Virus record (IMG/VR): IMGVR_UViG_3300042566_001780
Span: 186,001-250,000 of that record
Length of the DNA stretch: 64,000 bases
Strand: one strand, 5' to 3'
Shown: in pieces, positions 4,206 through 37,930 of the stretch
Numbering within the stretch: position 1 is the stretch's first letter
Layout: each line of letters opens with the position of its first letter
Position numbers and translations under genes: made by a program
Notes under the pieces: generated by a model
What the model saw: the letters and a program-made list of their open reading frames with translations, nothing else
Told to the model about the DNA's origin: nothing
Databases searched by the model: none

Positions 4206-4664
4206 ATGCAAACACGATTTATTAATCCATTAGATGAATTATTCGAAATAGACCCTAGTTGCAGAAAAATAGAAGATACTACTGATCGTGATGATACTGA
4301 TTATGAAGTAGCTGAAGTCCAAAGTCAACCTGTTGAAGTAGTCAAAGATGAAGAAGATATTGACACTGATCAAAAAATAGATGCAGTATATGATGCAGCG
4401 CTCGAAGCTTACCAAAATCAAACTGCTATGGTTGAATTGCTTGAGCCACGATATGCTGCACGTAATGCAGAGGTGGCAGCTACTTATTTGAATATTGCTT
4501 TACAGGCAGTTACTTCAAAAGCTCGTGTAAAGAATGATAGAAAACGGGTTGGACAGTTTATCCCGGGGGCATCCAATAAAATCACGAATAATACTATTGT
4601 TGCATCCCGGGAAGAAATTCTTAGAATGATTTCAGTTGATGCTGAGACTAAGAAATTATCTTAG
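4206..4664 (+). CDS. Putative terminase small subunit (gp16-like)
   Basis: 152 aa, acidic N-terminus, helical core EPRYAARNAEVAATYL, C-terminal ITNNTIVASREEIL resembling the gp16 layout. Confidence 0.5.
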   Translation: MQTRFINPLDELFEIDPSCRKIEDTTDRDDTDYEVAEVQSQPVEVVKDEEDIDTDQKIDAVYDAALEAYQNQTAMVELLEPRYAARNAEVAATYLNIALQAVTSKARVKNDRKRVGQFIPGASNKITNNTIVASREEILRMISVDAETKKLS

Positions 4665-5865: not shown

Positions 5866-5873
5866 CTATTTAG
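5866..5873 (-). promoter_or_regulatory. Late-promoter-like box CTAAATAG
   Basis: About 24 bp upstream of the 5842 start. Confidence 0.65.
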
Positions 5874-6472
5874 ACGACTTCTTCAAAATTCTCGGCAATT
5901 TGTTTGATATACGAATGCGCTCTAGAGTTTGGTGGAATAAAGTTGCCCAAATACTCCGCTTGCACTGGAAGAATCTTACGCGTCTTCAAAATCAATGCTT
6001 CTGCTCTATTTGGGATATATGGAGCATATAGCAATTGCATACCGGCTTCTTCAAGAAACAAAGAATCCTTCTTGTTGTTATCATACTTGCACGCAGTTAC
6101 CACGTTCATCCAGGTATCTTTTCCACCACGAGACACGGGAATAATATGATCGCGAGACAACTTGTAAGACGGGAATGAATGGCCACAATAAGCGCAAGTA
6201 TAGTTGTCCCGAGCAAACAACTCTTTATTTGTCAGCAATGGGATTTTGTTGCGCTTATATGCATGCGATTCACCACGAATAGCAATAATCGGGGCTGTCT
6301 CAATTTTAGATTGAAGACCACTGATTCGGTTAAGACCACCACGAAAACGAACAAAGTCGGGCTCGCCGAGTTGCCATGCCACCAAGTCTTTAGCATGGTA
6401 GACAATAGCATCTTCATAAGTGCCCCAGTGCAATGGATTACCTTGTTGGTCTAGAATCAAAATCGTGTTCAT
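5870..6472 (-). CDS. HNH endonuclease (McrA/HNH_5-like)
   Basis: LFARDNYTCAYCG...DHIIPVSRGGKDTWMNVVTAC..NNKK. Confidence 0.85.
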   Translation of the reverse strand: MNTILILDQQGNPLHWGTYEDAIVYHAKDLVAWQLGEPDFVRFRGGLNRISGLQSKIETAPIIAIRGESHAYKRNKIPLLTNKELFARDNYTCAYCGHSFPSYKLSRDHIIPVSRGGKDTWMNVVTACKYDNNKKDSLFLEEAGMQLLYAPYIPNRAEALILKTRKILPVQAEYLGNFIPPNSRAHSYIKQIAENFEEVV

Positions 6473-6473
6473 T

Positions 6474-6932
6474 TCATTCTTCCTTAGTTTTGAGCAAATC
6501 TTCTAATTGTTTAACATATTTTTGATGATCTCTTCGACCATCTTTTAAAAACTCTTCACAACTCATCCAAACAGTGTATTCTGTTTCAGAACACCATTTA
6601 TCAAAATTCCATCTATCAATTATCCTAGCAGCATATACAGTCAAGTCATATGTGCCAGATCGCAAGACTACTCTTTCATGTGCCAGTAAAAACGGTGTCT
6701 CTGCAAGATTATATGCTACTAACCCAAGTTCTTCCTCAGCTTCTCTAACAGCGCACCCAAAAGCATCTTCATCTTCTTCAATTTTACCTTTGCTAAGCAT
6801 AGGGCGAGGACCACCCAACTTTGGGTTAGAACTCACCATCATCAGATACTTGTAAGATCCATCTTCATCCTTCAGATAAGGAATTAACCCTGCTCTAGCA
6901 CGCTTCTCATACTGTAATTCATCATGTTCCAT
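6474..6932 (-). CDS. Nudix hydrolase
   Basis: Nudix box GKIEEDEDAFGCAVREAEEELG. Confidence 0.85.
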   Translation of the reverse strand: MEHDELQYEKRARAGLIPYLKDEDGSYKYLMMVSSNPKLGGPRPMLSKGKIEEDEDAFGCAVREAEEELGLVAYNLAETPFLLAHERVVLRSGTYDLTVYAARIIDRWNFDKWCSETEYTVWMSCEEFLKDGRRDHQKYVKQLEDLLKTKEE

Positions 6933-6953
6933 TAAAAACCTCTCGTGACAAAA

Positions 6954-6981
6954 ATAATGGGCCCATAGTAGAGCCCATTAT
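6954..6981 (-). terminator. Terminator-like hairpin at the left junction of the TnpB element
   Basis: ATAATGGGC (6954-6962) / GCCCATTAT (6973-6981), followed by a T tract on the minus strand. Confidence 0.55.
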
Positions 6982-7059
6982 AACTCCTAGGCGAGAAAAA
7001 TGCACAATCTTTAGTTGTGCATATGAATCGCCAAATTTCAAATAAGCGCTCCATTTCTC

Positions 7060-7067
7060 TATAAATA
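7060..7067 (+). promoter_or_regulatory. Exact T4-type late promoter TATAAATA inside the IS left end
   Basis: About 35 bp upstream of the tnpB GTG. Confidence 0.6.
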
Positions 7068-7101
7068 GATTATCAACTTATTTCTATTTAGTATCTATTT
7101 A

Positions 7102-8325
7102 GTGTCTCAAGAATCTTTCATCCGTCAAAATTACCGTATCTATCCGACTAAGGAGCAAGCTGCTTACCTTAATCAAGATATGGGAAATCAACGTTTCATC
7201 TGGAATTACTTTCTAGCAAAGTCGATTGAGCTGTATGAGTTGGAAAAGAAGTTCTGCTTCTTTTTTGAGATGGCTAAGATCTTAACTGATCTAAAGAAAG
7301 ACGAGAACTTTGCATTCCTGAAACTTGGTAATAGTCAAGGTTTACAGATGACTTGTAGAACTTTAGATATCGCACTAAGAGGTTCATTCAAGTCGACAAA
7401 AAATAAGACTAGGAAGGGCTTCCCAAAATTCAAAAAGAAGACAGGAAGCGGATCAGTGACATATCCACAAGGTGTCAAATTGGCGGATGGCAAGTTGCGA
7501 ATTCCAAAATTAGATACTACCATCAAAATCAAAGATAATGGAATGTGTCTTCCTGAAGATTACAATTCAGTCACCATTACTAGATCTGCATCTGGTAAGT
7601 TCTATGCTTCGTTTGTAGTACCTTTTCAGATTCCAGACAAAGTTCAAATCAATGCTGATTCGAAAGCAGTTGGTATTGATTTGAACTCTCAACATATCAT
7701 GGTACTTGATGACGGGTCAGCAGTCGTTAATCCAAAACATCTCCTTGAAAAAGAAAAGAGATTGAAGAGATATCAGCGAGCTTTCTCAAGAAAGCAGAAG
7801 GGATCTGCTAATAAAAATAAAGCTCGTGTTAAACTTGCAAAGTTACATGAAAAAGTAGCAAATTCGCGTAAAGATTTTGATGAAAAACTCACATTGGATG
7901 TCATCAAAAATAACGATATTATCATCATTGAAGATCTTAATGTGAAATCTATGCAGAAGTGGAATGGGCGGATGGTACAATCTGCTCCATTTGGAGCAAT
8001 TCGTTCGAAATTAACTTGGAAAGCCAACAAGTTAGGTAAACATCTAGTTATAATAAACAGGTACACCCCAACCAGTAAGGTTTGTTCCGAATGTGGGCAG
8101 ATACATGAGTTGGATCTGAAGACTAGATGGCTAAGTTGTGATTGTGGAGCTCAGCTCCACAGAGACCATAATGCAGCTATTAACATCCTAAATGCAGGAT
8201 TAAGAAATATTGAGGCGGGGACCGCCTTTCAAGCTTGTGGAGAGACTAAGGTTCATGATCTCGGTAATGAGATTAGGTGGGTCTCGTTGAAGCAAGAAAA
8301 TACACGATCTTTAGTCGTGTATTAG
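7102..8325 (+). CDS. tnpB: RNA-guided endonuclease TnpB
   Basis: N-terminal YRIYPT HTH; RuvC-I VGIDLN, RuvC-II IIIEDLN, Zn ribbon CSECG..CDCG, RuvC-III HRDHNAAINI. Confidence 0.95.
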   Translation: MSQESFIRQNYRIYPTKEQAAYLNQDMGNQRFIWNYFLAKSIELYELEKKFCFFFEMAKILTDLKKDENFAFLKLGNSQGLQMTCRTLDIALRGSFKSTKNKTRKGFPKFKKKTGSGSVTYPQGVKLADGKLRIPKLDTTIKIKDNGMCLPEDYNSVTITRSASGKFYASFVVPFQIPDKVQINADSKAVGIDLNSQHIMVLDDGSAVVNPKHLLEKEKRLKRYQRAFSRKQKGSANKNKARVKLAKLHEKVANSRKDFDEKLTLDVIKNNDIIIIEDLNVKSMQKWNGRMVQSAPFGAIRSKLTWKANKLGKHLVIINRYTPTSKVCSECGQIHELDLKTRWLSCDCGAQLHRDHNAAINILNAGLRNIEAGTAFQACGETKVHDLGNEIRWVSLKQENTRSLVVY

Positions 8326-8350
8326 TTCATAATCAAAAACTACTAATCTA
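8200..8350 (+). ncRNA. Predicted omega/reRNA: scaffold overlaps the tnpB 3' end, guide derives from the flank starting at 8330 (TAATCAAAAACTACTAATCT)
   Basis: Standard TnpB architecture with the right-end hairpin and TTCA end; 5' boundary approximate. Confidence 0.55.
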
Positions 8351-8357
8351 TGTTAGA

Positions 8358-8365
8358 CTATTTAG
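8358..8365 (-). promoter_or_regulatory. Late-promoter-like box CTAAATAG pointing into the IS right end
   Basis: Motif match just after the stop of 8375..9034. Confidence 0.5.
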
Positions 8366-8374
8366 CTTTGAAAA

Positions 8375-9034
8375 TCAGTCAACATTTTTTGCAAAGATTG
8401 TATTCGCTAGTTTTATGCTTTCAAACTTTATATTTTCAACCTCTAATTCTGACATTTTTCTGCTTATCCCTAAAGTAACATATCCTTTAAATGAACCATA
8501 ATACGGCGGCAGCGCAACCCGACATATCACTGGTACCAACGATTTTCCTTCTGGGGAAAGCTTCATATTCAAAGTTTCTTCATACGGATGGCACGCAAAC
8601 TTGCTATTCATCAATTCAACAATTTGTTTATTTTCAATTTCACTAGATGTAAACAATAAATGAGACTTTCCATGTTCATTTACCGATTTCTCATAGAGAA
8701 TATTGCCCATGATTGAATCAGTATAAAAGAAAAAGGTTTCTCTTTGATTAATTGAAATGTTTGTATTAACGACAGCAGCAAATACAATAAGACTGTTTTT
8801 ATCAACCAGATTTTTAATAGCAGTTTTTAGTTCTTGATTTAGTTCAATCTCTTTAACATTTGGAATAGGCGTTTTTATTTTTGGGTCTACATCTAATAGA
8901 AAAGATCTTTGTTCAAATAATGTTATGGAAATTATGAGCGCAGCAGAGAATAGTGCTAATAACAAAACACGTGTAAACGATATCCATGTGAGAATTTTGC
9001 CCAATAATGGAAGGACTTTTTTGAGTAGGTCCAT
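8375..9034 (-). CDS. Holin-T-like membrane protein, paralog 2
   Basis: One N-terminal TM segment and a GAF-like C-domain with two Cys; CRVALPPYYGSFKGYVTLGISR. Start moved to ATG 9034 (AGGGAG RBS). Confidence 0.45.
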   Translation of the reverse strand: MDLLKKVLPLLGKILTWISFTRVLLLALFSAALIISITLFEQRSFLLDVDPKIKTPIPNVKEIELNQELKTAIKNLVDKNSLIVFAAVVNTNISINQRETFFFYTDSIMGNILYEKSVNEHGKSHLLFTSSEIENKQIVELMNSKFACHPYEETLNMKLSPEGKSLVPVICRVALPPYYGSFKGYVTLGISRKMSELEVENIKFESIKLANTIFAKNVD

Positions 9035-9804: not shown

Positions 9805-10473
9805 TTAGTCAGAAAAAGGATCAATTATGACAGGAACATTACCCCGAAGCATGACATTTTCGGGATTAATGTCATTGCCTTGATGATTTAACATCAGATT
9901 AAAAACCAATTCAAAGAATTTTTCGTTTTTGATGATAGCATCCCTAATAGATTCCATAGCATCTTCATCATCTTTGTCAATGTCGCTAGTTGAGGGAATT
10001 GGCAAAGATAATACATAATCAGCTTTATCTTCAATTGATCCTAATAATAATTTGTCTTTGTCTAATTCCTCATTAGACATACCAATAATTTGAATGGCAT
10101 CTGAAAGACTAGAAATTCCATTAACATTTAGCGGCTTTAGCTTCTCTAACTTAACAAATTTGATAGTTGTGTCTTGCACTGGTTTTGCAAATTTTACTTT
10201 TTCTACTCTAACCTTGCTTAAAATTTTTGGAAAATGTTCATTGGGGTTATTTTGCACGAAATCTAAAAATCTTTCATACCCAGGATCTTTTTCCCAAACC
10301 CTCCAAACATAATTGTTTGATGGCTTAATGTCAAAAACCTTAGCATTCATACCGTCCTTAGCAGACACTTTTCTACTGGTTTCAGCATAACGAGAGACAA
10401 AATTAGCTAACTCAGTCTGGTATTTTATGTCTTCACCGCCACCTCTGAATAACAAAATTTCTAATAATTTCAT
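9805..10473 (-). CDS. Protein-kinase-like (PKL/APH fold) protein with an MKLLE leader
   Basis: DGMNAKVF (Gly loop), PNEHFPKI, catalytic DINPENVM, metal-binding IIDP. Confidence 0.65.
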   Translation of the reverse strand: MKLLEILLFRGGGEDIKYQTELANFVSRYAETSRKVSAKDGMNAKVFDIKPSNNYVWRVWEKDPGYERFLDFVQNNPNEHFPKILSKVRVEKVKFAKPVQDTTIKFVKLEKLKPLNVNGISSLSDAIQIIGMSNEELDKDKLLLGSIEDKADYVLSLPIPSTSDIDKDDEDAMESIRDAIIKNEKFFELVFNLMLNHQGNDINPENVMLRGNVPVIIDPFSD

Positions 10474-10943
10474 TTTAGATCCGAATAAATTCTGCCACCA
10501 ACATTGCCAATACCATCAAGAGATTCTAATTGATTGCGCCGACACCAAAAATCTTGGCCAACTTCTTTTGGCGCGCCATCTAAAGATTTTAAATTATTGT
10601 TACTGCAATCAAAACCACCATTAATCTCTCTAGGAGCACCCTTAAGAGAGGTTAATTGGTTGCTGAAGCACGTAAAATCGCGGCCAACTTCTCTAGGAGC
10701 AAATTTAAGAGAAGTCAATTGATTATCACTACAATAAAAGCTTCCACTAACTTCCCAAAATTTGACAGGGATGAAACTTAATCTTTTTCTGCTTAAATCA
10801 ACATCGCCATCAACATCTACCATAAGATTATCTCTTATGGTGTAGTTTCTGATATTCATTTTTTGCAACCATGCCTCAATTTCTTCTCTAGTCCGGAGAA
10901 ATTGATTACTGTCGTTTTCAAGTAGTTGTCTTAGTAGTTTCAT
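10470..10943 (-). CDS. Short leucine-rich-repeat protein with an MKLLRQLLE leader
   Basis: GSFYCSDNQLTSLKFAPREVG-type repeats; paralog of the C-terminal half of 4661..5842. Confidence 0.7.
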   Translation of the reverse strand: MKLLRQLLENDSNQFLRTREEIEAWLQKMNIRNYTIRDNLMVDVDGDVDLSRKRLSFIPVKFWEVSGSFYCSDNQLTSLKFAPREVGRDFTCFSNQLTSLKGAPREINGGFDCSNNNLKSLDGAPKEVGQDFWCRRNQLESLDGIGNVGGRIYSDLK

Positions 10944-30680: not shown

Positions 30681-33600
30681 ATGAAACCAACTATAGCAAT
30701 TATTGACATTATTGGGTTAACATATGATGGAAATACTCTTAACTTGCGAGGATTAGGTGGATCAGAATCTGCGGTGATTCTGCTTTCAAAAGAGCTATCT
30801 TTATGCGGGTTTGATGTTACAGTGTTCAATAATTGCATTGATAAACATGCGAGTCCTGGTGTTTATGCCGGTGTCAAATATGTTGATATATCCAAAATAG
30901 ATTCTGTTGAGAAAAATTTTGATATTGTCATCTCTTCGAGGACAGTAATACCTTTTATTACAGAAGATTTGCATCCATATTTCTTCCAGTTCGACCCAGC
31001 GAGATTCAAGCAATTAGCGCAAACAGCCAAATTTAAAGCTGTTTGGATGCATGACACTTTTTGTAAAGGTGATGAATTTCTAGAAAGGCTTCTACTTAAC
31101 GGGTCAATTGACGAGATTTTTACTCTGTCCGATTTCCACACTACATATGTCAGTACCGCAGACCATGGGCATCGCAGAATGCCCGAGGTTCTCAAAAACA
31201 AAATATTTATGACTCGAAATGGAGCCGTAAACTATTTTCCAGAAGTCAACATTTCTAAAAAAGACAGAAACTTATTTGTCTACAATGCATCAGTAACAAA
31301 AGGTATGCTGCCATTGGTCAAAAACATTTGGCCCCTCTTCAAATCGTTAAGACCAAATGCTCGATTAAAAGTGATCGGTGGATATTACCGATTTAGAGAA
31401 AACGCTGCACCTGATGAACAAGAAAAAACCTGGCGAGAACTTGTCAATGATCCGATCTACAAAACTTTGGATGTAGAGTTCACCGGAATTTTGAGGCAAC
31501 AAGAAATAGCAGAAATATTATCATCTGCTTCATTTATGGTTTATCCTGGCGCATTCCCAGAAACCTTTGGTATTTCTACTCTTGAATCTTTACTATACAA
31601 TACTCCACTGATTACGACCCGATTTGGTGCATTAGAAGAAACTGCAATTGATTCTGCATGCTATAAGATTGATTATTGTATTGAGCCTAATGGTTTATTT
31701 CCAAATATTTCTTTAGATGACCAATCTAAGAAGTTTGTTCAATTAATGTTGTCTGCGTATGATAATACATATTTGCACCAACAAAAAATGTATGCTTGCA
31801 ATGCAGTCAAAACTATAGCAGGCTGGGATAGTGTGGCATTGCAATGGAAGCAACATCTTTTTAAGAAGCTTGGTCTGTATTTGCCAGCATCAGATTACCA
31901 AAAAATAACTTCTATTAATGCTGAAGTTAAAGAAGTTTTTGGCAGAAGATTTAGCAATCCAGAAGAAAATTATCTTCCGCGAAATACCCAGCAGCATATA
32001 ACAGTCATTACCCCAGTATTCAACGCCGAGAAATACATAGAGCAATGTGTCCAATCTGTTATTACACAAGATTATGATAATTGGGACATGTACATTATTG
32101 ATGATTGCTCTACTGATTGTACTTCTAAAATTCTAGATGAATTGTCGGAATTAGATTCTCGCATCCATATCATTCATCAAACCTATAATGCCGGTGCGGT
32201 CAAAAATCAGGTAGTTACTATTAAAAAGATATGTTCGCCAGATGACATTATTCTGTTGTTAGATGGCGATGATGCACTTGTGAATGACAATCAAATTTTC
32301 CATTTTTACAACAATCTTTATACTAATGACCAAACTGAATTTACATATGGTTCGTGCTTCTCATTAGTTGATAAAATTCCATTAGTTGCTCAGCCATATC
32401 CAGAAGAAATTAAGAAATCTAAAAGATATCGAGATCATAAGTTCAACTGGAATATGCCATATACACATCTGAGAACCTTTAGAGCAAGATTAATGCTGAA
32501 TATCCCAGATGATAAATTTAAAGATGCGAATGGAAATTGGTATAAAGCTGGTGGTGACAATGCTACTTTTTATGAAGTAATTGAGCGCGCTGATCCAAAT
32601 AAAGTAAAAGCTATTTCTAGGATTAACTATCTCTACAATGACCTAAATCCAATCAATGATTGGAAAGTTAATGGACACGAACAAACAGCTAATGCAAAGT
32701 TTATCGGTAAATCAAATCTCAAATCTATGAAAACTATCTTAATCGCTATCCCAACTGCCAAGTACATTGAACCAGAAACCTTTAAGTCAATTTATGACTT
32801 AGAAGTTCCTGAAGGTTATAGGACTGAGTTTCAGTATTTTTTTGGGTACGCCCTGGAACAGGTACGCAATTTAATATCTGATTGGGCTCAGCGTTACGAT
32901 TATCTTTTTGCTGTAGACTCTGATATGAGCTTCAAACCGGATACATTGAAGCGATTATTGTCTCATGACAAAGATGTTGTCAGTGGGCTATACATCCAGC
33001 GGAAACCAGGTGAGCATATCTTGGAACTTTACCGCAATGGGCATAATATTCCATATGGTGATATTAAAAATCTGGGTCTAGTTGAAATTGATGCATGTGG
33101 ATTTGGTTGTGTATTAGTCAAGTCTAAAGTATTTTCTACCATTGGATATCCACAATTTGTATACAAATCAGCTTTAGATCATAAAGATACCGTATCAGAA
33201 GATGTGTACTTCTGCATGAAAGCAAAGCAATTTGGTTTCTCAATTTATGCAGATACGAATGTCATTTGCGATCATATTGGATCAACGAAATTTGTTGTAG
33301 ATCAAACTATTACTAAAAAGCAATCTGCATTTGATAGGCTTCTTGAATTGAGCAATACACGTTTGCTTCCAAGCAAACATGTTGAATATCTCTATGATAT
33401 GTCAAAGTCCCAGAATATCAAACCAAAAGTCATTTTTGATATAGGAGCATGTGTCCTGCACTGGACTCGAGAAGCGGTGAATGTTTGGCCGGATGCTAAG
33501 TTTTTTGCTTTTGAAGCTATGCAAGAATCAGAGCTTATTTTCAAACATTTTGGTGTCCCGCACTTTATTGGTGTATTAAGCGATCAAGACAATAAGGAAG

Positions 33601-33998
33601 TGAGCTTCTACAAAAATGTCACACACCCAGGCGGAAATTCATATTACCGAGAGAATGACGAGATAGTAAAAAATGCGTCCGCTTATTTCAATGAAGGAAA
33701 CAAAGAAATTCGCAAAACAGTCACTCTTGATACGCTAATGAAATCTGCTAATTTGCCACAACCAGATTTAATCAAGATGGATGTTCAAGGTGCAGAGCTA
33801 GATATTTTGAAAGGCGGTTTGTCTACTTTAACTAAATGTCAAGATGTTATTCTTGAATTGCAAAAAATTGAGTATAACAAAGGAGCTCCATTGAAAGACG
33901 AAGTCATCCAATTTATGCTTGAGCGGGGATTTAAATTAATATCTGGTCCATTCTGTGATAACGGACCAGACGGTGATTATCATTTTTCTAGAATTTAG
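30681..33998 (+). CDS. Four-domain enzyme: GT4 (GT-B) + GT2 + GT2-like + FkbM methyltransferase
   Basis: GLGGSESA and YPGAFPETFGISTLES (GT4); VITPVFNAEKYIEQC and LLDGDD (GT2); YLFAVDSD, GFGCVLVK, SEDVYFC (GT-A); IFDIGA and IKMDVQGAELDILKG (FkbM). Confidence 0.9.
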   Translation: MKPTIAIIDIIGLTYDGNTLNLRGLGGSESAVILLSKELSLCGFDVTVFNNCIDKHASPGVYAGVKYVDISKIDSVEKNFDIVISSRTVIPFITEDLHPYFFQFDPARFKQLAQTAKFKAVWMHDTFCKGDEFLERLLLNGSIDEIFTLSDFHTTYVSTADHGHRRMPEVLKNKIFMTRNGAVNYFPEVNISKKDRNLFVYNASVTKGMLPLVKNIWPLFKSLRPNARLKVIGGYYRFRENAAPDEQEKTWRELVNDPIYKTLDVEFTGILRQQEIAEILSSASFMVYPGAFPETFGISTLESLLYNTPLITTRFGALEETAIDSACYKIDYCIEPNGLFPNISLDDQSKKFVQLMLSAYDNTYLHQQKMYACNAVKTIAGWDSVALQWKQHLFKKLGLYLPASDYQKITSINAEVKEVFGRRFSNPEENYLPRNTQQHITVITPVFNAEKYIEQCVQSVITQDYDNWDMYIIDDCSTDCTSKILDELSELDSRIHIIHQTYNAGAVKNQVVTIKKICSPDDIILLLDGDDALVNDNQIFHFYNNLYTNDQTEFTYGSCFSLVDKIPLVAQPYPEEIKKSKRYRDHKFNWNMPYTHLRTFRARLMLNIPDDKFKDANGNWYKAGGDNATFYEVIERADPNKVKAISRINYLYNDLNPINDWKVNGHEQTANAKFIGKSNLKSMKTILIAIPTAKYIEPETFKSIYDLEVPEGYRTEFQYFFGYALEQVRNLISDWAQRYDYLFAVDSDMSFKPDTLKRLLSHDKDVVSGLYIQRKPGEHILELYRNGHNIPYGDIKNLGLVEIDACGFGCVLVKSKVFSTIGYPQFVYKSALDHKDTVSEDVYFCMKAKQFGFSIYADTNVICDHIGSTKFVVDQTITKKQSAFDRLLELSNTRLLPSKHVEYLYDMSKSQNIKPKVIFDIGACVLHWTREAVNVWPDAKFFAFEAMQESELIFKHFGVPHFIGVLSDQDNKEVSFYKNVTHPGGNSYYRENDEIVKNASAYFNEGNKEIRKTVTLDTLMKSANLPQPDLIKMDVQGAELDILKGGLSTLTKCQDVILELQKIEYNKGAPLKDEVIQFMLERGFKLISGPFCDNGPDGDYHFSRI

Positions 33999-36900
33999 AA
34001 AGTGCCGCCATCAATTTCGCCCCAAACCGGAAGACCTTGATCATTTGCTTGCAGAATTTGCCCATTCGTTCCAATTGGCAATTTTGCAACTGTATTGGTG
34101 GCGCTAGCATACAACATATCCCCTTTAGTATATGAAGATACGCCAGTGCCACCATGATCAAATGAAAGTATTCCAGTTATATTGGCATGACCAACGTCAA
34201 CTGCAGTTACTGGGATAGTAATATTTGCAGATCCATTAAAGCTCGTAGCAGTGCCTGTCACTGGCCCGCTAATAGCAATAGTTCTGGAAGTCTGCAGGGT
34301 GCTAGCAGTTGTTGCATTTCCGGAGAATGATGTAGCAGTTATTGTGCCAGGTACAGTCAGATTTGCTACACCCTGGGAAATAACATCTAATTCCATTGCG
34401 CTGAATACTGTACCACCGGATGGCGTAAATCTCCATCTCCAAGTATCAGTCTGCGATGAATCGTCTGCTAAATTGAAGTCAAAAAATGTATTAGATCCAG
34501 AAACTGAAGTAGAGATAGATGCATTATCTGTTGCCTCTGCAGCAAATGCAATTGACGTTACTCCAGTCAACGTTGTATGATTGTGACTATTGTCGACGAC
34601 TTGCGCAGTTAATGTGCCTGACGTCAATCCGGTTAAGGTAACAGAACCAGTCAAATCTCCAGCTAGTGTAATAACTGGGCTAGGCTTATTTTGTATTTCA
34701 GACCAGTCTATACTAGTGTCATTTGCGCTAATAGTGATTGTAGCAGAATCATTCCTGGTAATAGATACGTTTGTACCTGCAACCAGTGTAACTGTATCAG
34801 ATAGCGCATTTGACCCTGTCAGTTTTATACCTGCACCAGAAGCCGATGTTTCAGCAGATAACACATATGTCGTATTGGTATCAACAACAGTTTCAGTTGC
34901 AGTAGAAACTGCAGTGACGTGTCCGAATGTGTCAAATGTTAATCCAGTGACGTAGGTTCTGGCAGTTGCTGATAGATTTGCTACGCTTGATGTATCGGCA
35001 TGGCTAAACTGCGTGCCTACTAAAGTTAATCCAGAACCAGCAGTATAGGTGGTATTGACTGAACTAATGCTAATAGTATTAGCGTCAACATAAGCTACTG
35101 TTACGTTACTGCCTGATGAGAGCTTAATTGTGTCAGTACCTGATCCAGATCCACCGGCATTTAGGTTAAAGTTTGCTCCGCCTGTAGTTGCCTCTGCACT
35201 AATATTGTAGGTTGTATTTGTGTCTACAATATTGACAGTTGGCAATGTTAAAGTAACTGAACCTTTTGCCGTGACGTGGCCCTGAGCATCATATGTGACA
35301 CTCGGCACTGAGAATGAATCACCAAAAGCAAGATTTCTAGTAACTCCGCCTTCTGAAGCAGTTCCAGCAACCACCACATTTGAGTGATTAAATGTAGTCC
35401 CAGAAAGCGATAATCCAGTACCTGCAGAGTATGTAGTATTAGTGTCAACTACAGTTTCGGTGCCTGTTGAATATCCAGTCACATGGCCAAAAGTGTCAAA
35501 GGTTAATCCTGTGACATAGGTTCTACCATTAGCAGCCAAATTACTTACACTTGATGTATCAGTATGACTAAATTGAGTGCCAGTTAAGGTTAATCCACCT
35601 CCCGCTGTATATGTGCCAACACCTGAAAATTGTGTCCAATTTATAGCGGTAGTGCCTACAGTCATTGGTAATGTTGGAACTACTGCTACCCATCCTGTAT
35701 TTGCCTGTGTTGTCCCTTCCTGCACAAACACATAACCAGAAGGTATTTCAGATGCTTCATCGCAATACCCACAACGGGTTAATACCCATGGCGTAGAAGC
35801 AGAGCCTAAGTCTGATATGTAATAACGACCGTTATGCGCAGCATTTGTTTGGTTCTTAACTAAAATACCAGTTAATGTAGTTGTAAAAGTAACACCATCA
35901 ATATCTGGAATAACACCATTTACTGTAGCTGTAAGGGTTGCACCTACTCCTAAAGTCCCATTATTGTATGTTGCTGATAAGTTTCCTGTGGTAGCAGCTT
36001 TTACTGCAGGCTTTGCAGCAATGCCTTGAGCTACCTCGTCGACATACTGCTTAGTGGCAGCATGCAGAGCTTGAGATGGGCCACTGTGTAATGTTAAGAA
36101 ACCTGTTAACGTATCACCGCTAACATTAACAAATAAATTATCGACTTCTGATTTCTGATAATAGCGTGTGTCCAGATCTATTGAGCCTGTAGTAATAGCA
36201 GTGACGTGCCCAAAAGTATCAAATGTAACTGAGATGTCCTGGAGCACATTAGCGCCAGAATTATCTATTGCCAGATTAGTGACAGATGAAGTATCTGTGT
36301 GGGAAATAGTTGGGGTCCAACCTTCACCAGCAGTTCCTGTAATTGTTATTCCTGATCCAGCTGTGATACCTGCTACGTAATTTCCAGTAGTGTCAGTTCC
36401 AAGTGCAACAGAATTTGCAGCAATAGTCGTGGTAATAGACACATTACCTAAGTTAGTCATTGTAGCAGAACCGGTGACATCACCAGTCAAGGTAATAGTT
36501 GGATCAGCTACATCAAAATTAAGTTTACCGGTTGCATCATCATACGTGACTGAAATTCCAGATTCAGTATTTGAAGATACCATATTTCCGACAGTATCCT
36601 GAATTGATTCCACATTTATAGAAACTGCTCCAGCCGTTACTGTAAAATCTGTTGCACTAAATGAAGCAATACCTTTTGTAGAAGCGGATGCATCTGCAAT
36701 AGAAATTGATACGGTATTGTTAGTGATTGCTGTATTGACAGGGTCGGTACCAACAAATGAAAGGGTATCAGTTAGTAATGATACGCTATCTGTACCTGAA
36801 TCTCCAGAAATGTTCAGGGAAGATGATACAGGTGAATTTTGCCATCTTGAGTTTGCAGCACTCCAAGATAATACCTGGCCGTCTGTTACCCCATTTATTC

Positions 36901-37930
36901 TAACATCATGAAGATCATATAGATGATACCCGAAGTCAGGTCTAACAAGCAAAATACCGTTTTGCGCAGAAGGCGATGTAGATTGGCGTAGAACCGCAGC
37001 TACTACTATTTTTGGATTGGGTGATGTAGGCTCAACTGAAGTAAAACCACCAGGAACAGTGGGATTTAGATAGAGTATCGTACCAGCCGGATAATCATAT
37101 AAAAGCAGATCCCGAACTTTACCTAATGTTGTTACATATCCCCATTCATTATTCAGAATGTTTTGGGTGGCAATACCTATAACCCAACGTGGTTGGAATC
37201 CAATGGCAGTAACATCAGCTTTCGTGAATAATGCTTGGTCACCTTGCGCACCAGCAAACATCACTACTTCACCGTTTAGAATGTCACCAACTGCTCTTCC
37301 ATAAAAATGCTGTTCTTGAAAAATTTGACCGGTGACCCCATTCATTAATGAAAAGTCGTAGGTCTTATCGGTTTCATTCCATTTAAGAACATCTAGCGGA
37401 GTATATCCAACTTCATTGGTTGTTATTCTTAACCCGGATACAGATACTAAATTATTACTATCTCGTACTGGTACAGTTGACGGCGCATTTGAAGTAGATG
37501 ATTGATAACCGTCAAGTAAATCTGCATTGAGGTTAGTGACAACGGTGGCAGATGCTACTTGAAGTGGTGCAGTGCCTACAGGAATAGTTGATTTAAGTAC
37601 TGTTGCACTCAAACTTCCGCTGATTTGCAATTTGTCAACACCGTTGTCTATACTCGTGCCAATAAGCACGTTACCAAACAACTCGGCTAACTGGATTTTA
37701 CCAGTATCATAAATCTCTATGCTTGGGACACCAGAAATGTCATTGACGGCAAAAATGAGGCCAGTTAGACTATCAGTGATTGAAAATAATTGACCACTAT
37801 TTCCTGTGACAGAAAGCGTATCAGAATCGAGCATACTAATTTGAATAGTATGCGTAGTCGAATCAGAAACAAAACTAATATTCTGTGTTTCTAATCCATT
37901 TTCAACTACAAATCTTTTGTTATTTGCCAT
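33995..37930 (-). CDS. Large modular fibre protein
   Basis: Thr/Ser/Gly-rich; repeated HTDTSSV...FDTFGHVT modules; N-domain shared with 21364..23544. Confidence 0.8.
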   Translation of the reverse strand: MANNKRFVVENGLETQNISFVSDSTTHTIQISMLDSDTLSVTGNSGQLFSITDSLTGLIFAVNDISGVPSIEIYDTGKIQLAELFGNVLIGTSIDNGVDKLQISGSLSATVLKSTIPVGTAPLQVASATVVTNLNADLLDGYQSSTSNAPSTVPVRDSNNLVSVSGLRITTNEVGYTPLDVLKWNETDKTYDFSLMNGVTGQIFQEQHFYGRAVGDILNGEVVMFAGAQGDQALFTKADVTAIGFQPRWVIGIATQNILNNEWGYVTTLGKVRDLLLYDYPAGTILYLNPTVPGGFTSVEPTSPNPKIVVAAVLRQSTSPSAQNGILLVRPDFGYHLYDLHDVRINGVTDGQVLSWSAANSRWQNSPVSSSLNISGDSGTDSVSLLTDTLSFVGTDPVNTAITNNTVSISIADASASTKGIASFSATDFTVTAGAVSINVESIQDTVGNMVSSNTESGISVTYDDATGKLNFDVADPTITLTGDVTGSATMTNLGNVSITTTIAANSVALGTDTTGNYVAGITAGSGITITGTAGEGWTPTISHTDTSSVTNLAIDNSGANVLQDISVTFDTFGHVTAITTGSIDLDTRYYQKSEVDNLFVNVSGDTLTGFLTLHSGPSQALHAATKQYVDEVAQGIAAKPAVKAATTGNLSATYNNGTLGVGATLTATVNGVIPDIDGVTFTTTLTGILVKNQTNAAHNGRYYISDLGSASTPWVLTRCGYCDEASEIPSGYVFVQEGTTQANTGWVAVVPTLPMTVGTTAINWTQFSGVGTYTAGGGLTLTGTQFSHTDTSSVSNLAANGRTYVTGLTFDTFGHVTGYSTGTETVVDTNTTYSAGTGLSLSGTTFNHSNVVVAGTASEGGVTRNLAFGDSFSVPSVTYDAQGHVTAKGSVTLTLPTVNIVDTNTTYNISAEATTGGANFNLNAGGSGSGTDTIKLSSGSNVTVAYVDANTISISSVNTTYTAGSGLTLVGTQFSHADTSSVANLSATARTYVTGLTFDTFGHVTAVSTATETVVDTNTTYVLSAETSASGAGIKLTGSNALSDTVTLVAGTNVSITRNDSATITISANDTSIDWSEIQNKPSPVITLAGDLTGSVTLTGLTSGTLTAQVVDNSHNHTTLTGVTSIAFAAEATDNASISTSVSGSNTFFDFNLADDSSQTDTWRWRFTPSGGTVFSAMELDVISQGVANLTVPGTITATSFSGNATTASTLQTSRTIAISGPVTGTATSFNGSANITIPVTAVDVGHANITGILSFDHGGTGVSSYTKGDMLYASATNTVAKLPIGTNGQILQANDQGLPVWGEIDGGTF

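What the first reader, a model, noticed from the sequence alone, without database searches (positions are those of the whole stretch)
6978..8350. Solo TnpB element whose left end carries a phage late promoter and a start-occluding hairpin
Seen: intact tnpB with matched end hairpins sharing the loop TCTTTAG, and no tnpA. An exact TATAAATA lies at 7060-7067. Its overlapping arm TAAATAGA (7062-7069) is complementary to two TCTATTTA copies (7083-7090, 7094-7101), the second abutting the GTG. Established: T4 I-TevI and gene e are silenced in read-through transcripts by a hairpin whose 5' arm is missing from late-promoter transcripts. Inference: this TnpB is domesticated as a late-expressed RNA-guided homing endonuclease. 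The predicted target is the empty site TTAT|TAATCAAAAACTACTAATCT in co-infecting relatives.
Basis: partly seen in the sequence, partly recalled or inferred. Interest (0 to 1): 0.65.

Follow-up and report, generated by a model that had tools for sequence, protein, structure and literature searches.

The report
Phage TnpB insertion with late promoter
A 1,349-bp transposase-less TnpB insertion sequence sits in front of a NUDIX gene of a large T4-like-transcribing phage and carries that phage's late-promoter motif in its left end, but the proposed start-hiding RNA hairpin is weak and better read as two more late promoters facing the other way.

Summary
The element is an IS200/IS605-type, tnpA-less TnpB insertion at window 6982-8330. 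Its ends are fixed in two ways. First, the cleavage and guide tetranucleotides covary across sister copies (TTAT/AAAA on the left, TCAT/GAAA on the right). Second, a near-identical empty allele in two other metagenomes skips exactly 1,349 bp and reads CCCATTATAATCAAAAAC.

The phage is a 292-kb metagenomic record that encodes a gp55 homologue. It uses (G/T)CTAAATAG(A) as its late-type promoter; 41 of 61 TAAATAG cores lie upstream of genes, including tail genes. The TnpB site TATAAATAGA is a variant of this motif. The block is conserved in five of six sister elements although synonymous divergence is about 1, so late expression is likely but not shown.

The hairpin is 8 AU-rich pairs, no more stable than shuffled sequence, and not conserved. 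Its 3' arms are two exact CTAAATAGA consensus promoters on the minus strand, pointing at the NUDIX gene, which the insertion cut off from its own promoter at 8358-8365. TnpB keeps D193/E277/D355 and is under purifying selection. This is a phage-adapted member of a known kind, not a domesticated gene.

The parts
6474..6932 (-). NUDIX hydrolase gene. It is the left neighbour and lies downstream of the insertion in minus-strand transcription.
   Evidence: Pfam NUDIX, E 6.5e-10. A 67%-identical orthologue in a 332-kb relative has no TnpB upstream.
6954..6981 (-). Hairpin with a T-run in the NUDIX 5' leader. The insertion lies exactly at its foot.
   Evidence: Terminator-like scan finds 11 pairs. 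The relative L057 has a hairpin at the same place, between promoter and ATG.
6978..6981 (+). TTAT: left cleavage/target tetranucleotide (C_L). It is flank, not element, and is the predicted TnpB TAM.
   Evidence: TTAT/TTAG/TTAA in sister copies covary with AAAA/AAAC/AAAT 5' of the LE hairpin. The empty-allele joint agrees.
6982..8330 (+). The insertion sequence: 1,349 bp, IS200/IS605 type, tnpB only.
   Evidence: A contig in run X3 (1 mismatch in about 1,250 flanking nt) and one in X2 skip exactly 1,349 bp. The joint is ambiguous over the 4 shared letters ATAA. Alignments diverge beyond these ends.
6996..6999 (+). AAAA: left guide tetranucleotide (G_L), immediately 5' of the LE hairpin.
   Evidence: Covaries with C_L across sister elements. 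The IS608 rule is taken from PMC3201880.
7000..7022 (+). LE subterminal hairpin ATGCACAA-TCTTTAG-TTGTGCAT. On the minus strand a T-run follows it, so it looks like a terminator.
   Evidence: It starts 18 nt after the cleavage site (19 nt in IS608).
7052..7069 (+). CATTTCTC-TATAAATAGA: late-type promoter for tnpB. The predicted start is about 7073.
   Evidence: Member of the genome-wide TAAATAG family. The block is invariant in five of six sister elements although dS is about 1 in the adjoining ORF. The T4 rule of -13 to -6 comes from PMC1524935. No RNA data.
7083..7091 (-). CTAAATAGA: exact consensus late promoter on the minus strand, predicted start about 7079.
   Evidence: CTAAATAGA is among the top upstream 9-mers, with 17 of 26 copies upstream of genes.
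7094..7102 (-). Second CTAAATAGA on the minus strand, predicted start about 7090. It is an 11-nt tandem duplicate of the first and overlaps the G of the GTG.
   Evidence: There is one copy in L053/L054 and none in L055, L056, L064 or L066.
7102..8325 (+). tnpB, 407 aa, with a GTG start and no Shine-Dalgarno. Both traits are conserved in the sister copies.
   Evidence: Pfam. ISDra2 TnpB structures 8H1J and 8EXA match at E about 1e-48. D193, E277 and D355 are invariant and dN/dS is 0.07-0.10.
8176..8330 (+). Predicted omegaRNA (reRNA) scaffold, overlapping the 3' end of tnpB and the RE.
   Evidence: Consensus fold has 41 pairs, 16 with compensatory changes. A sub-threshold RAGATH-18 match lies at 8234-8298 (30.3 bits against a gathering score of 44.9). 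Read depth peaks at 8140-8313 across many elements.
8296..8299 (+). GAAA: right guide tetranucleotide (G_R).
   Evidence: GAAA pairs with TCAT in nine copies and GAAG with TCAC in L055 and L066.
8300..8322 (+). RE subterminal hairpin ATACACGA-TCTTTAG-TCGTGTAT. It looks like a terminator on the minus strand.
8327..8330 (+). TCAT: right cleavage tetranucleotide (C_R) and the last bases of the element.
   Evidence: Covariation with G_R. Loose ends of other copies begin at 8329/8330.
8331..8346 (+). Predicted guide AATCAAAAACTACTAA. Its length is assumed by analogy with ISDra2. The target is TTAT plus this sequence in the empty allele.
   Evidence: Inferred from the RE boundary and from the empty allele CCCATTATAATCAAAAAC.
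8358..8365 (-). CTAAATAG: probably the original late promoter of the NUDIX gene, now cut off by the insertion. It fires into the RE, antisense to the guide.
   Evidence: With the element removed it lies 76 nt before the NUDIX ATG, against 79 nt for CCTAAATAC in relative L057.

Best explanation
Window 6982-8330 is a non-autonomous (tnpA-less) IS200/IS605-family element. It encodes an intact RNA-guided nuclease TnpB and its 3' omegaRNA.

- **Insertion site.** It inserted 3' of a TTAT, at the foot of a hairpin in the 5' leader of a late-transcribed NUDIX gene of a roughly 300-kb phage. That phage uses a gp55-type late sigma factor.
- **Lineage.** The element belongs to a TnpB lineage found so far only on phage-like contigs.
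- **Expression.** Its left end carries a conserved copy of the T4-type late promoter (TATAAATAGA; the phage's own consensus is CTAAATAGA). TnpB and, by read-through and self-processing, the omegaRNA are therefore most likely made late in infection, when many phage genomes are present.
- **Action.** The TnpB-omegaRNA complex would then cut genomes carrying the empty site TTAT|AATCAAAAACTACTAA. These could be excision products or co-infecting relatives. Recombinational repair would copy the element in.
- **The TCTATTTAG repeats.** The two repeats before the GTG are most likely two consensus late promoters on the opposite strand. They form a face-to-face divergent pair with the tnpB promoter and point at the NUDIX gene, which the insertion separated from its own promoter. 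They are probably not arms of a translational hairpin.

*Shown here:* identity, ends, the empty allele, motif statistics, conservation, the intact catalytic triad.

*Inferred:* promoter activity and timing, nuclease activity, homing, and any function of the minus-strand motifs.
For: **Identity**
- Pfam domains.
- ISDra2 TnpB structures match at E about 1e-48.
- D193/E277/D355 are invariant and dN/dS is 0.07-0.10 against six sister genes.
- The 3' RNA fold has 16 compensatory pairs.

**Ends**
- C_L/G_L and C_R/G_R covary, following the IS608 rule (PMC3201880).
- A 4,437-nt contig in an independent freshwater run, and a second in a wastewater run, join 6979-6983 to 8329-8333. They skip exactly 1,349 bp with no duplication.

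**Late promoter**
- gp55 homologue: phrog_234 at E 8e-31 and T4 gp55 at E 2e-9.
- TAAATAG is upstream of genes in 41 of 61 copies, typically 15-40 nt before the start. These include the tail-tube and tail-fibre genes.
- The motif is absent from the replication module at window 46.8-64 kb.
- CTAAATA is a published late motif of the T4-like phage Aeh1 (PMC1524935).
- The block CATTTCTCTATAAATA is invariant in five of six sister LEs while dS is 0.8-1.3.
- The sister whose contig lacks the motif altogether (L056) has a degenerate copy.

**Phage-resident lineage**
- Relatives at 65% identity or more all lie on metagenomic contigs with phage genes such as a T4 portal, sheath and tRNAs.
- The best cellular genome match is 41%.

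**Minus-strand promoters**
- They are exact CTAAATAGA copies.
- The same face-to-face geometry occurs at two native divergent gene pairs, genome 65185/65218 and 284173/284223.
- Sister L068 also has two minus-strand TTAAATAG motifs, facing a portal gene.
- T4 seg/mob genes are known to embed promoters for downstream genes (PMC2988022).
Against: - **No RNA data.** Only contigs could be laid, so no transcription start or timing is shown.
- **Weak translation signals.** The GTG start has no Shine-Dalgarno, so TnpB output may be very low.
- **Only 8 of the 61 cores carry the TATAAATAG form** (16 exact TATAAATA octamers in all). All 8 precede mobile-element-type or unknown genes. They could therefore be a separate promoter class with different timing.
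- **Obstacles for the minus-strand promoters.** They lie 151 and 162 nt from the NUDIX ATG. Two terminator-like hairpins stand in between, at 7022-7000 and 6981-6954.
- **L053/L054 counter-example.** These copies carry one TCTATTTAG although their upstream genes are co-oriented. In that context a minus-strand promoter has no obvious gene to drive.
- **No TnpA in this genome.** The source of the transposase is unknown.
- **Homing is not the only route to the polymorphism.** Filled and empty alleles would also arise from TnpA insertion or excision alone.
Confidence: 0.72

Rival explanations
1. Read-through transcripts fold TAAATAGA (7062-7069) onto one of the TCTATTTA copies and hide the GTG. 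Late transcripts starting near 7073 lack the 5' arm and are translated, as for T4 I-TevI and gene e.
For: - The geometry fits the T4 rule: the 5' arm lies upstream of the predicted start and the second copy abuts the GTG.
- This phage does use such hairpins elsewhere. Read-through forms fold at -20 to -28 kcal/mol against about 0 for late transcripts at genome 272429, 20867, 165406 (a homing endonuclease), 60272 and 101611.
- T4 precedent is described in PMC2988022.
- L053, which has co-oriented upstream genes, keeps one complement copy.
Against: - The stem has only 8 AU-rich pairs, worth about -5 kcal/mol. The whole leader folds at -8.8, z = -1.4, and 16 of 200 shuffles do as well.
- The L053 version has z = -0.46.
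- The complement is absent from L055, L056, L064 and L066, while the promoter and the GTG are conserved.
- There is no Shine-Dalgarno to sequester.
- At this locus both neighbours are on the opposite strand, so there is no co-oriented upstream unit to read through from.
- The complement is an exact consensus promoter. In the genuine hairpins the complement is imperfect as a promoter and extends 13-18 bp.
Confidence: 0.12
2. The TCTATTTAG repeats have no function. A few substitutions in an AT-rich leader, followed by an 11-nt slippage duplication, produced them. The tnpB promoter block is the only selected feature of the leader.
For: - Sister leaders read ...GCTATTCT-GTG or ...GCTATCCC-GTG, which is 2-3 changes from TCTATTTA-GTG.
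- The leader between the promoter and the GTG varies in length and sequence.
- The window's two copies are a perfect 11-nt tandem apart from the last base.
Against: - Outside upstream regions, only about 9 copies of the 9-mer CTAAATAGA occur in 583 kb of both strands. A chance exact match in a 30-nt leader is therefore improbable, at roughly 1e-3.
- The copy points at a gene that has just lost its promoter.
Confidence: 0.25
3. The element is immobile and has been domesticated by the phage, for example as an RNA-guided weapon against competing phages or as a regulator. On this view it no longer behaves as a transposon.
For: - There is no tnpA in the record.
- TnpB is under strong purifying selection.
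- It has phage-type expression signals.
- Sister L068 has lost its LE and is fixed between portal and tail-tube genes.
Against: - Both ends are intact, with covarying cleavage and guide tetranucleotides.
- Sister copies at 84-89% identity sit at different loci with retargeted TTAT/TTAG/TTAA sites.
- The locus is polymorphic filled/empty in nature.
- The guide matches the element's own empty site and no other gene.
- A Y1 TnpA exists on a related viral contig.
Confidence: 0.1

Closest known systems
IS200/IS605 family, tnpB-only elements. Examples are ISDra2 and IS608 for mechanism, and ISCaje1-3 in the T4-like Campylobacter phages CP220 and CPt10 (PMC2853527).
   Same: - Subterminal hairpins at both ends, no inverted terminal repeats and no target duplication.
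- Insertion 3' of a fixed tetranucleotide that is read by a guide tetranucleotide 5' of the hairpin.
- TnpB with a RuvC D-E-D triad and a 3' omegaRNA that runs into the flank.
- tnpB-only copies in T4-like phages have been described since 2010.
   Different: - The left end carries the resident phage's gp55-type late promoter, conserved across a phage-restricted sub-lineage.
- The start is GTG with no Shine-Dalgarno.
- Two outward-facing consensus late promoters lie in the leader.
- The second zinc-finger pair is CxC rather than CxxC.
TnpB as a transposon-encoded homing endonuclease (Meers et al. 2023, PMC10055086), and 'non-restorative homing' into co-infecting phages or plasmids (PMC13565253).
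   Same: The predicted target is the element's own empty site, TAM plus right flank. Filled and empty alleles co-circulate, which is the situation the model needs.
   Different: Nothing has been tested here. The phage setting with late-promoter timing is proposed in the review only as a theoretical case.
T4 homing-endonuclease regulation: I-TevI/II/III, segB and Aeh1 mobE use a late promoter inside a stable RBS-sequestering hairpin, and seg/mob genes embed promoters for downstream genes (PMC2988022).
   Same: - A selfish nuclease gene is driven by a late promoter.
- Promoters for the displaced downstream gene lie inside the mobile element.
- The same phage has genuine T4-type hairpins at other mobile-element genes.
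   Different: At the TnpB the hairpin is marginal and not conserved. The nuclease is RNA-guided, not protein-guided.
Late promoters of T4-like phages: TATAAATA in T4 and CTAAATA in Aeromonas phage Aeh1 (PMC1524935).
   Same: A short AT-rich -10-like element with no -35, a gp55 homologue in the genome, and positions upstream of structural genes.
   Different: The consensus here extends to CTAAATAG(A). The phage is only remotely related to any isolate (helicase about 25% identical).

Membership tests
IS200/IS605 insertion sequences | Subterminal imperfect palindromes at both ends and no terminal inverted repeats | tested here: met
   Hairpins at 7000-7022 and 8300-8322 share the loop TCTTTAG. 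They are conserved with compensatory stem changes in sister copies.
IS200/IS605 insertion sequences | Insertion 3' of a specific tetra- or pentanucleotide, without target-site duplication, and with seamless empty sites | tested here: met
   The empty allele skips exactly 1,349 bp and reads CCCATTAT|AATCAAAAAC with no duplication.
IS200/IS605 insertion sequences | Cleavage sites recognised by guide tetranucleotides 5' of each hairpin (the IS608 C/G rule) | tested here: met
   TTAT:AAAA, TTAG:AAAC and TTAA:AAAT on the left; TCAT:GAAA and TCAC:GAAG on the right. The rule comes from PMC3201880. The right-end change is a single evolutionary event, shared by L055 and L066.
IS200/IS605 insertion sequences | A Y1 (HUH) TnpA transposase, in cis or available in trans | tested here: not met
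   PF01797 finds nothing in the 292-kb record, which is 82% complete. None adjoins any sister copy. A Y1 TnpA is present on the related viral contig of L003. The element is therefore a non-autonomous member.
TnpB (OMEGA) RNA-guided nucleases | HTH/WED-REC-RuvC-TNB architecture with the RuvC D-E-D triad | tested here: met
   Pfam. Alignment to 8H1J and 8EXA. D193, E277 and D355 are invariant in 8 relatives.
TnpB (OMEGA) RNA-guided nucleases | A structured omegaRNA overlapping the 3' end of the gene and the RE, with the guide taken from the flank | tested here: inconclusive
   A conserved fold with 16 compensatory pairs and a sub-threshold RAGATH-18 match. No RNA has been observed.
TnpB (OMEGA) RNA-guided nucleases | TAM-dependent, guide-dependent DNA cleavage | not testable with these tools
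   Needs a cleavage or interference assay.
gp55-dependent (T4-type) late promoters | A phage-encoded gp55 sigma factor | tested here: met
   G000 10187-10609(-): phrog_234 at E 8e-31 and T4 gp55 at E 2e-9. gp33 and gp45 were not searched.
gp55-dependent (T4-type) late promoters | A short TATAAATA-like motif enriched 15-40 nt upstream of late (structural) genes | tested here: met
   with gene functions.
gp55-dependent (T4-type) late promoters | Transcription starts about 6 nt downstream of the motif, late in infection | not testable with these tools
   Only contigs of public runs were available, and the reads tool was used once.
T4-type RBS/start-sequestering hairpin control | A very stable hairpin that buries the RBS or start and whose 5' arm lies upstream of the late start | tested here: not met
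   -8.8 kcal/mol with z = -1.4. There is no Shine-Dalgarno. It is not conserved. Genuine examples in this genome reach -20 to -28 kcal/mol.

The most novel reading that the evidence does not exclude
A phage-restricted lineage of tnpA-less TnpB elements has taken the gp55 late promoter into its left end. It spreads among T4-like and jumbo phages by RNA-guided homing during co-infection. It secures its retention by carrying outward-facing late promoters that restore expression of the gene it interrupts. In effect this is the RNA-guided counterpart of the T4 seg/mob homing endonuclease genes. The co-circulating filled and empty alleles found here would make it directly testable.
Probability: 0.3. 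Interest if true: 0.7.

Novelty: new member of a known kind. Interest (0 to 1): 0.5.

Why it matters
TnpB-only insertion sequences in T4-like phages and TnpB 'homing' are each known. Homing between co-infecting phages is so far only a theoretical case (PMC13565253).

This locus supplies what a test needs:
- exact ends;
- an exact TAM and target;
- naturally co-occurring filled and empty alleles;
- a plausible late-expression signal under selection.

It also shows that a mobile element can adapt its regulatory end to the transcription system of a viral host. In this phage, homing endonucleases, IS607 transposases and TnpB all share the same TATAAATAG promoter variant.

Tried and rejected
- **DNA searches against isolated phages.** The 2.6-kb region found nothing, near or distant.
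- **Rfam.** It gave only a sub-threshold RAGATH-18 hit in the window and nothing for the omegaRNA region in sister loci.
- **Conserved omegaRNA 23-mer.** It was absent from genome contigs and viral contigs. An exact match is stringent, so this is weak evidence.
- **P0007 (86% identical, 110-kb contig).** No DNA could be fetched.
- **Relative with the NUDIX orthologue (L057).** It is too diverged (54% GC) for a base-level empty-site comparison. Only gene order and promoter spacing could be compared.
- **T4-exact TATAAATA as the phage's late promoter.** I first considered this. It has only 16 copies against roughly 7-15 expected. I rejected it in favour of the TAAATAG core after k-mer enrichment.
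- **L043, the 417-aa partner of an IS607-type TnpA.** It shows only a marginal RuvC-I-like match to TnpB (E 0.2) and is left open.
Full report
**1. The observation**

- An ORF at 7102-8325 (GTG start, 407 aa) carries the three TnpB Pfam domains.
- Two hairpins share the loop TCTTTAG: ATGCACAA/TTGTGCAT at 7000-7022 and ATACACGA/TCGTGTAT at 8300-8322.
- TATAAATA lies at 7060-7067.
- TAAATAGA (7062-7069) is complementary to TCTATTTA at 7083-7090 and 7094-7101.
- The second copy abuts the GTG.

The window is bases 186001-250000 of a 291,687-bp IMG/VR virus record that CheckV rates 82% complete. That record has no Y1 transposase. It holds a second, 35%-identical TnpB that belongs to an IS607-type element.

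**2. The genome**

- No isolated phage matches at the DNA level. The helicase is about 25% identical to its best isolate match.
- Structural genes (tail tube, tail fibres, decoration-like proteins) fill much of the window.
- The genome encodes a homologue of the T4 late sigma factor gp55 at G000 10187-10609. It matches phrog_234 at E 8e-31 and T4 gp55 itself at E 2e-9.

**3. The promoter**

Exact TATAAATA is not notably frequent: 16 copies against roughly 7-15 expected. Half of them, however, lie 20-35 nt upstream of a start codon.

An unbiased k-mer test showed what the real signal is. The core TAAATAG occurs 61 times, 41 of them within 80 nt upstream of genes (p about 1e-38). The commonest form is (G/T)CTAAATAG(A).
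- It precedes the tail-tube gene, both tail-fibre genes and the 1311-, 1543- and 638-aa structural genes.
- It is absent from the nucleotide-metabolism and replication block at window 46.8-64 kb.
- CTAAATA is the published late motif of the T4-like phage Aeh1. T4's TATAAATA occupies -13 to -6 (PMC1524935).

The TnpB site (TATAAATAGA) is the 'TA' variant of this family. It predicts a start at about 7073.

All eight TATAAATAG sites in the genome precede mobile-element-type or unknown genes. These are two IS607-type serine-recombinase TnpAs, a homing endonuclease, an HNH-like gene, the TnpB, and three unknowns.

**4. Sister elements**

The word search found relatives at 84-89% identity on other metagenomic contigs, each at a different locus.
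- Their neighbours are phage-like: tRNAs, SbcCD-like genes, an ADP-ribosyltransferase. In L068 they are a T4 portal, tail tube and sheath.
- The best match in 185,579 species-representative cellular genomes is only 41% identical.
- Among six sisters dN/dS is 0.07-0.10 with dS 0.8-1.3, and D193, E277 and D355 are invariant.
- Despite that synonymous divergence, the non-coding block CATTTCTC-TATAAATA is identical in five of six left ends.
- The exception is L056, which lies on a contig with no TAAATAG motif at all.
- The GTG start and the absence of a Shine-Dalgarno are conserved too.

This is good comparative evidence that the promoter block is functional. It also shows that the block is a property of the element lineage, not of this one copy. 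The more distant L003-L005 group (58-59% identical) lacks this segment. It carries a CTAAATA(A/G)G of its own about 35 nt before its ATG.

**5. The ends and the empty site**

*Right end.* All copies agree through ...TAGTTCA(T/C) and diverge afterwards.

*Left end.* Similarity begins after TTAT (window, L053, L003-5), TTAG (L055) or TTAA (L056).

*Covariation.* These last bases covary with the four bases 5' of the left hairpin: AAAA, AAAC and AAAT. The right-end TCAT/TCAC covaries with GAAA/GAAG 5' of the right hairpin.

*The IS608 rule.* This is the rule established for IS608, where the cleavage sites TTAC and TCAA are read by guide tetranucleotides 5' of each hairpin (PMC3201880). Spacings are similar too. 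The left cleavage site lies 18 nt from the hairpin foot, against 19 in IS608.

*Boundaries.* The element is therefore 6982-8330.

*Reads.* Laying public contigs on 6400-9000 confirmed this independently.
- A 4,437-nt contig from a freshwater metagenome of another study matches both flanks with one mismatch and skips exactly 1,349 bp.
- The joint is ambiguous only over the shared letters ATAA.
- A wastewater run shows the same joint.
- Other copies' contigs break away at 8329/8330.

*Correction.* The empty allele reads CCCATTATAATCAAAAAC. The guide starts at 8331 (AATCAAAAACTACTAA...) and the TAM is TTAT.

**6. The hairpin**

Several lines argue against a start-occluding hairpin here.
- *Stability.* The proposed stem is eight AU-rich pairs. 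The leader's MFE is -8.8 kcal/mol (z = -1.4; 16 of 200 shuffles are as good). The L053 version is no better (z = -0.46).
- *Conservation.* Four of six sister leaders lack the complement.
- *No read-through source.* Both neighbouring gene blocks are on the opposite strand, so no co-oriented upstream transcript exists for the hairpin to silence.
- *Comparison within the genome.* The phage does use T4-style occlusion elsewhere. Five genes, among them a homing endonuclease and a 3,128-aa gene, have hairpins of -20 to -28 kcal/mol. These span the promoter and bury the SD or start, and they vanish in transcripts begun at the promoter.

It is simply not what the TnpB leader looks like.

**7. What the repeats are instead**

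TCTATTTAG is the reverse complement of CTAAATAGA, the top-ranked consensus promoter. The leader therefore holds two exact late promoters on the minus strand, with predicted starts at about 7079 and 7090. They point at the NUDIX gene.

A further minus-strand CTAAATAG lies at 8358-8365, just outside the right end. With the element removed it would sit 76 nt before the NUDIX ATG. In the 332-kb relative L057, which has no TnpB here, a CCTAAATAC lies 79 nt before the orthologous ATG, with a hairpin in between in both phages. So the insertion cut the NUDIX gene off from its late promoter, and the element now offers two replacements.

Supporting parallels:
- The same face-to-face geometry of divergent late promoters occurs at two native gene pairs.
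- Sister L068, wedged between portal and tail-tube genes, also has two minus-strand TTAAATAG motifs facing the portal gene.
- T4 seg and mob genes are known to embed promoters for displaced downstream genes, which favours their retention.

Caveats:
- Two terminator-like hairpins lie between these promoters and the NUDIX ATG.
- L053 keeps one copy although its upstream genes are co-oriented.
- The window's two copies are an 11-nt tandem duplication, and sister leaders are only 2-3 substitutions away.

I put functional outward promoters at about 0.5, a neutral by-product at about 0.25, and the hairpin at about 0.12.

**8. The protein and its RNA**

- TnpB aligns end to end with ISDra2 TnpB (8H1J, 8EXA; E about 1e-48).
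- The second zinc-finger pair is CxC rather than CxxC.
- The last 155 nt of the element fold into a conserved structure with 16 compensatory pairs across seven copies. A sub-threshold RAGATH-18 match lies at 8234-8298.
- Read depth peaks over 8140-8313, showing that many elements share this scaffold.
- One wastewater contig joins 7032 to 8288. Another carries left-end leader-like letters in front of 8178. These hint at tnpB-less miniature derivatives.

**9. Comparison with what is known**

- TnpB homologues occur in 419 phage records.
- tnpB-only IS200/IS605 elements in T4-like Campylobacter phages were described in 2010 (PMC2853527).
- TnpB-driven homing is established in bacteria (PMC10055086).
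- Homing into co-infecting phages is listed as a theoretical mode (PMC13565253).
- No paper in the library combines TnpB with a phage late promoter.

The element passes the membership tests for a non-autonomous IS200/IS605 element and for TnpB. It is not domesticated in any sense the data support.

**10. Verdict**

This is an ordinary kind of element with a well-supported and modestly new regulatory adaptation. The locus is unusually well defined for experiment.
- the late promoter, the TAM and the empty allele hold;
- the hairpin and the domestication do not;
- the target is one base off.

Noticed in passing
Whole genome G000; in the window for example 1571 (+), 5866 (-), 9764 (-), 12849 (-), 23583 (-), 30665 (-), 37957 (-), 43581 (-), 46780 (-): The genome-wide late-type promoter is (G/T)CTAAATAG(A), 15-40 nt before start codons of structural genes. 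A gp55 homologue lies at G000 10187-10609(-). The phrog_234 match there runs through one TAA stop.
   Followed up: yes
G000 84111, 101611, 156675, 157290, 163914, 165406, 193062 (= window 7062), 258646: All eight TATAAATAG-variant promoters precede mobile-element-type or unknown genes. These are two IS607-type serine-recombinase TnpAs, a homing endonuclease, an HNH-like gene and the TnpB. None precedes an identified structural gene.
   Followed up: partly
G000 272429 (+), 20867 (+), 165406 (+), 60272 (-), 101611 (+): Very stable hairpins (-20 to -28 kcal/mol) span the late promoter and bury the SD or start codon. They disappear in transcripts begun at the promoter. This is T4 gene e / I-TevI-type control at five other genes, including a 3,128-aa gene.
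   Followed up: partly
G000 258683-260431 (L047 plus L002), and G000 155393-157264 (L044 plus L043): There are two IS607-like units. One is a serine-recombinase TnpA followed by a 364-aa TnpB. The other is a TnpA followed by a 417-aa protein with no Pfam hit and only a marginal RuvC-I-like motif (E 0.2).
   Followed up: partly
window 5870-6472 (-): An HNH endonuclease gene lies directly downstream of the NUDIX gene, so this neighbourhood collects selfish nucleases.
   Followed up: no
window 8353-8292 (-), predicted: The cut-off NUDIX promoter at 8358-8365 should fire antisense across the omegaRNA guide (8331-8346). It would run into the RE hairpin plus T-run, which looks like a terminator on that strand. 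A short antisense RNA to the guide is therefore possible.
   Followed up: no
window 7032->8288 joint and a loose end at 8178 (run X2): Some wastewater contigs join left-end leader sequence to the omegaRNA/RE region and skip most of tnpB. These may be miniature (tnpB-less) derivatives of the element.
   Followed up: no
L068:2326-3760: A 69%-identical TnpB sits in a 190-kb T4-like contig, antisense between the Portal_T4 and tail-tube/sheath genes. Its RE is intact but it has no recognisable LE hairpin. Only 93 nt of divergent promoter-like motifs separate it from the portal start.
   Followed up: partly
L150 (G001 33734-37093): The 41-kb viral contig that carries the 59%-identical TnpB (L003) also encodes a Y1 TnpA (E 9e-34), flanked by 383- and 377-aa ORFs. 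Phage-borne transposases that could act in trans therefore exist in this group.
   Followed up: partly
L055:276-359, 1213-1315, 2777-2850, 4277-4349: The sister element in L055 is embedded in a phage tRNA gene cluster. A tRNA gene starts about 50 nt after its right end.
   Followed up: no
window 30681-33998 (+): A 1,105-aa multidomain protein combines glycosyltransferase, GtrB-like and methyltransferase-like regions, and lies among tail-fibre genes.
   Followed up: no
P0048, P0063, P0070 and others: Many relatives at 55-58% identity are labelled Nanoarchaeota MAGs by their sources. They could be mis-binned viral contigs or a real archaeal reservoir.
   Followed up: no
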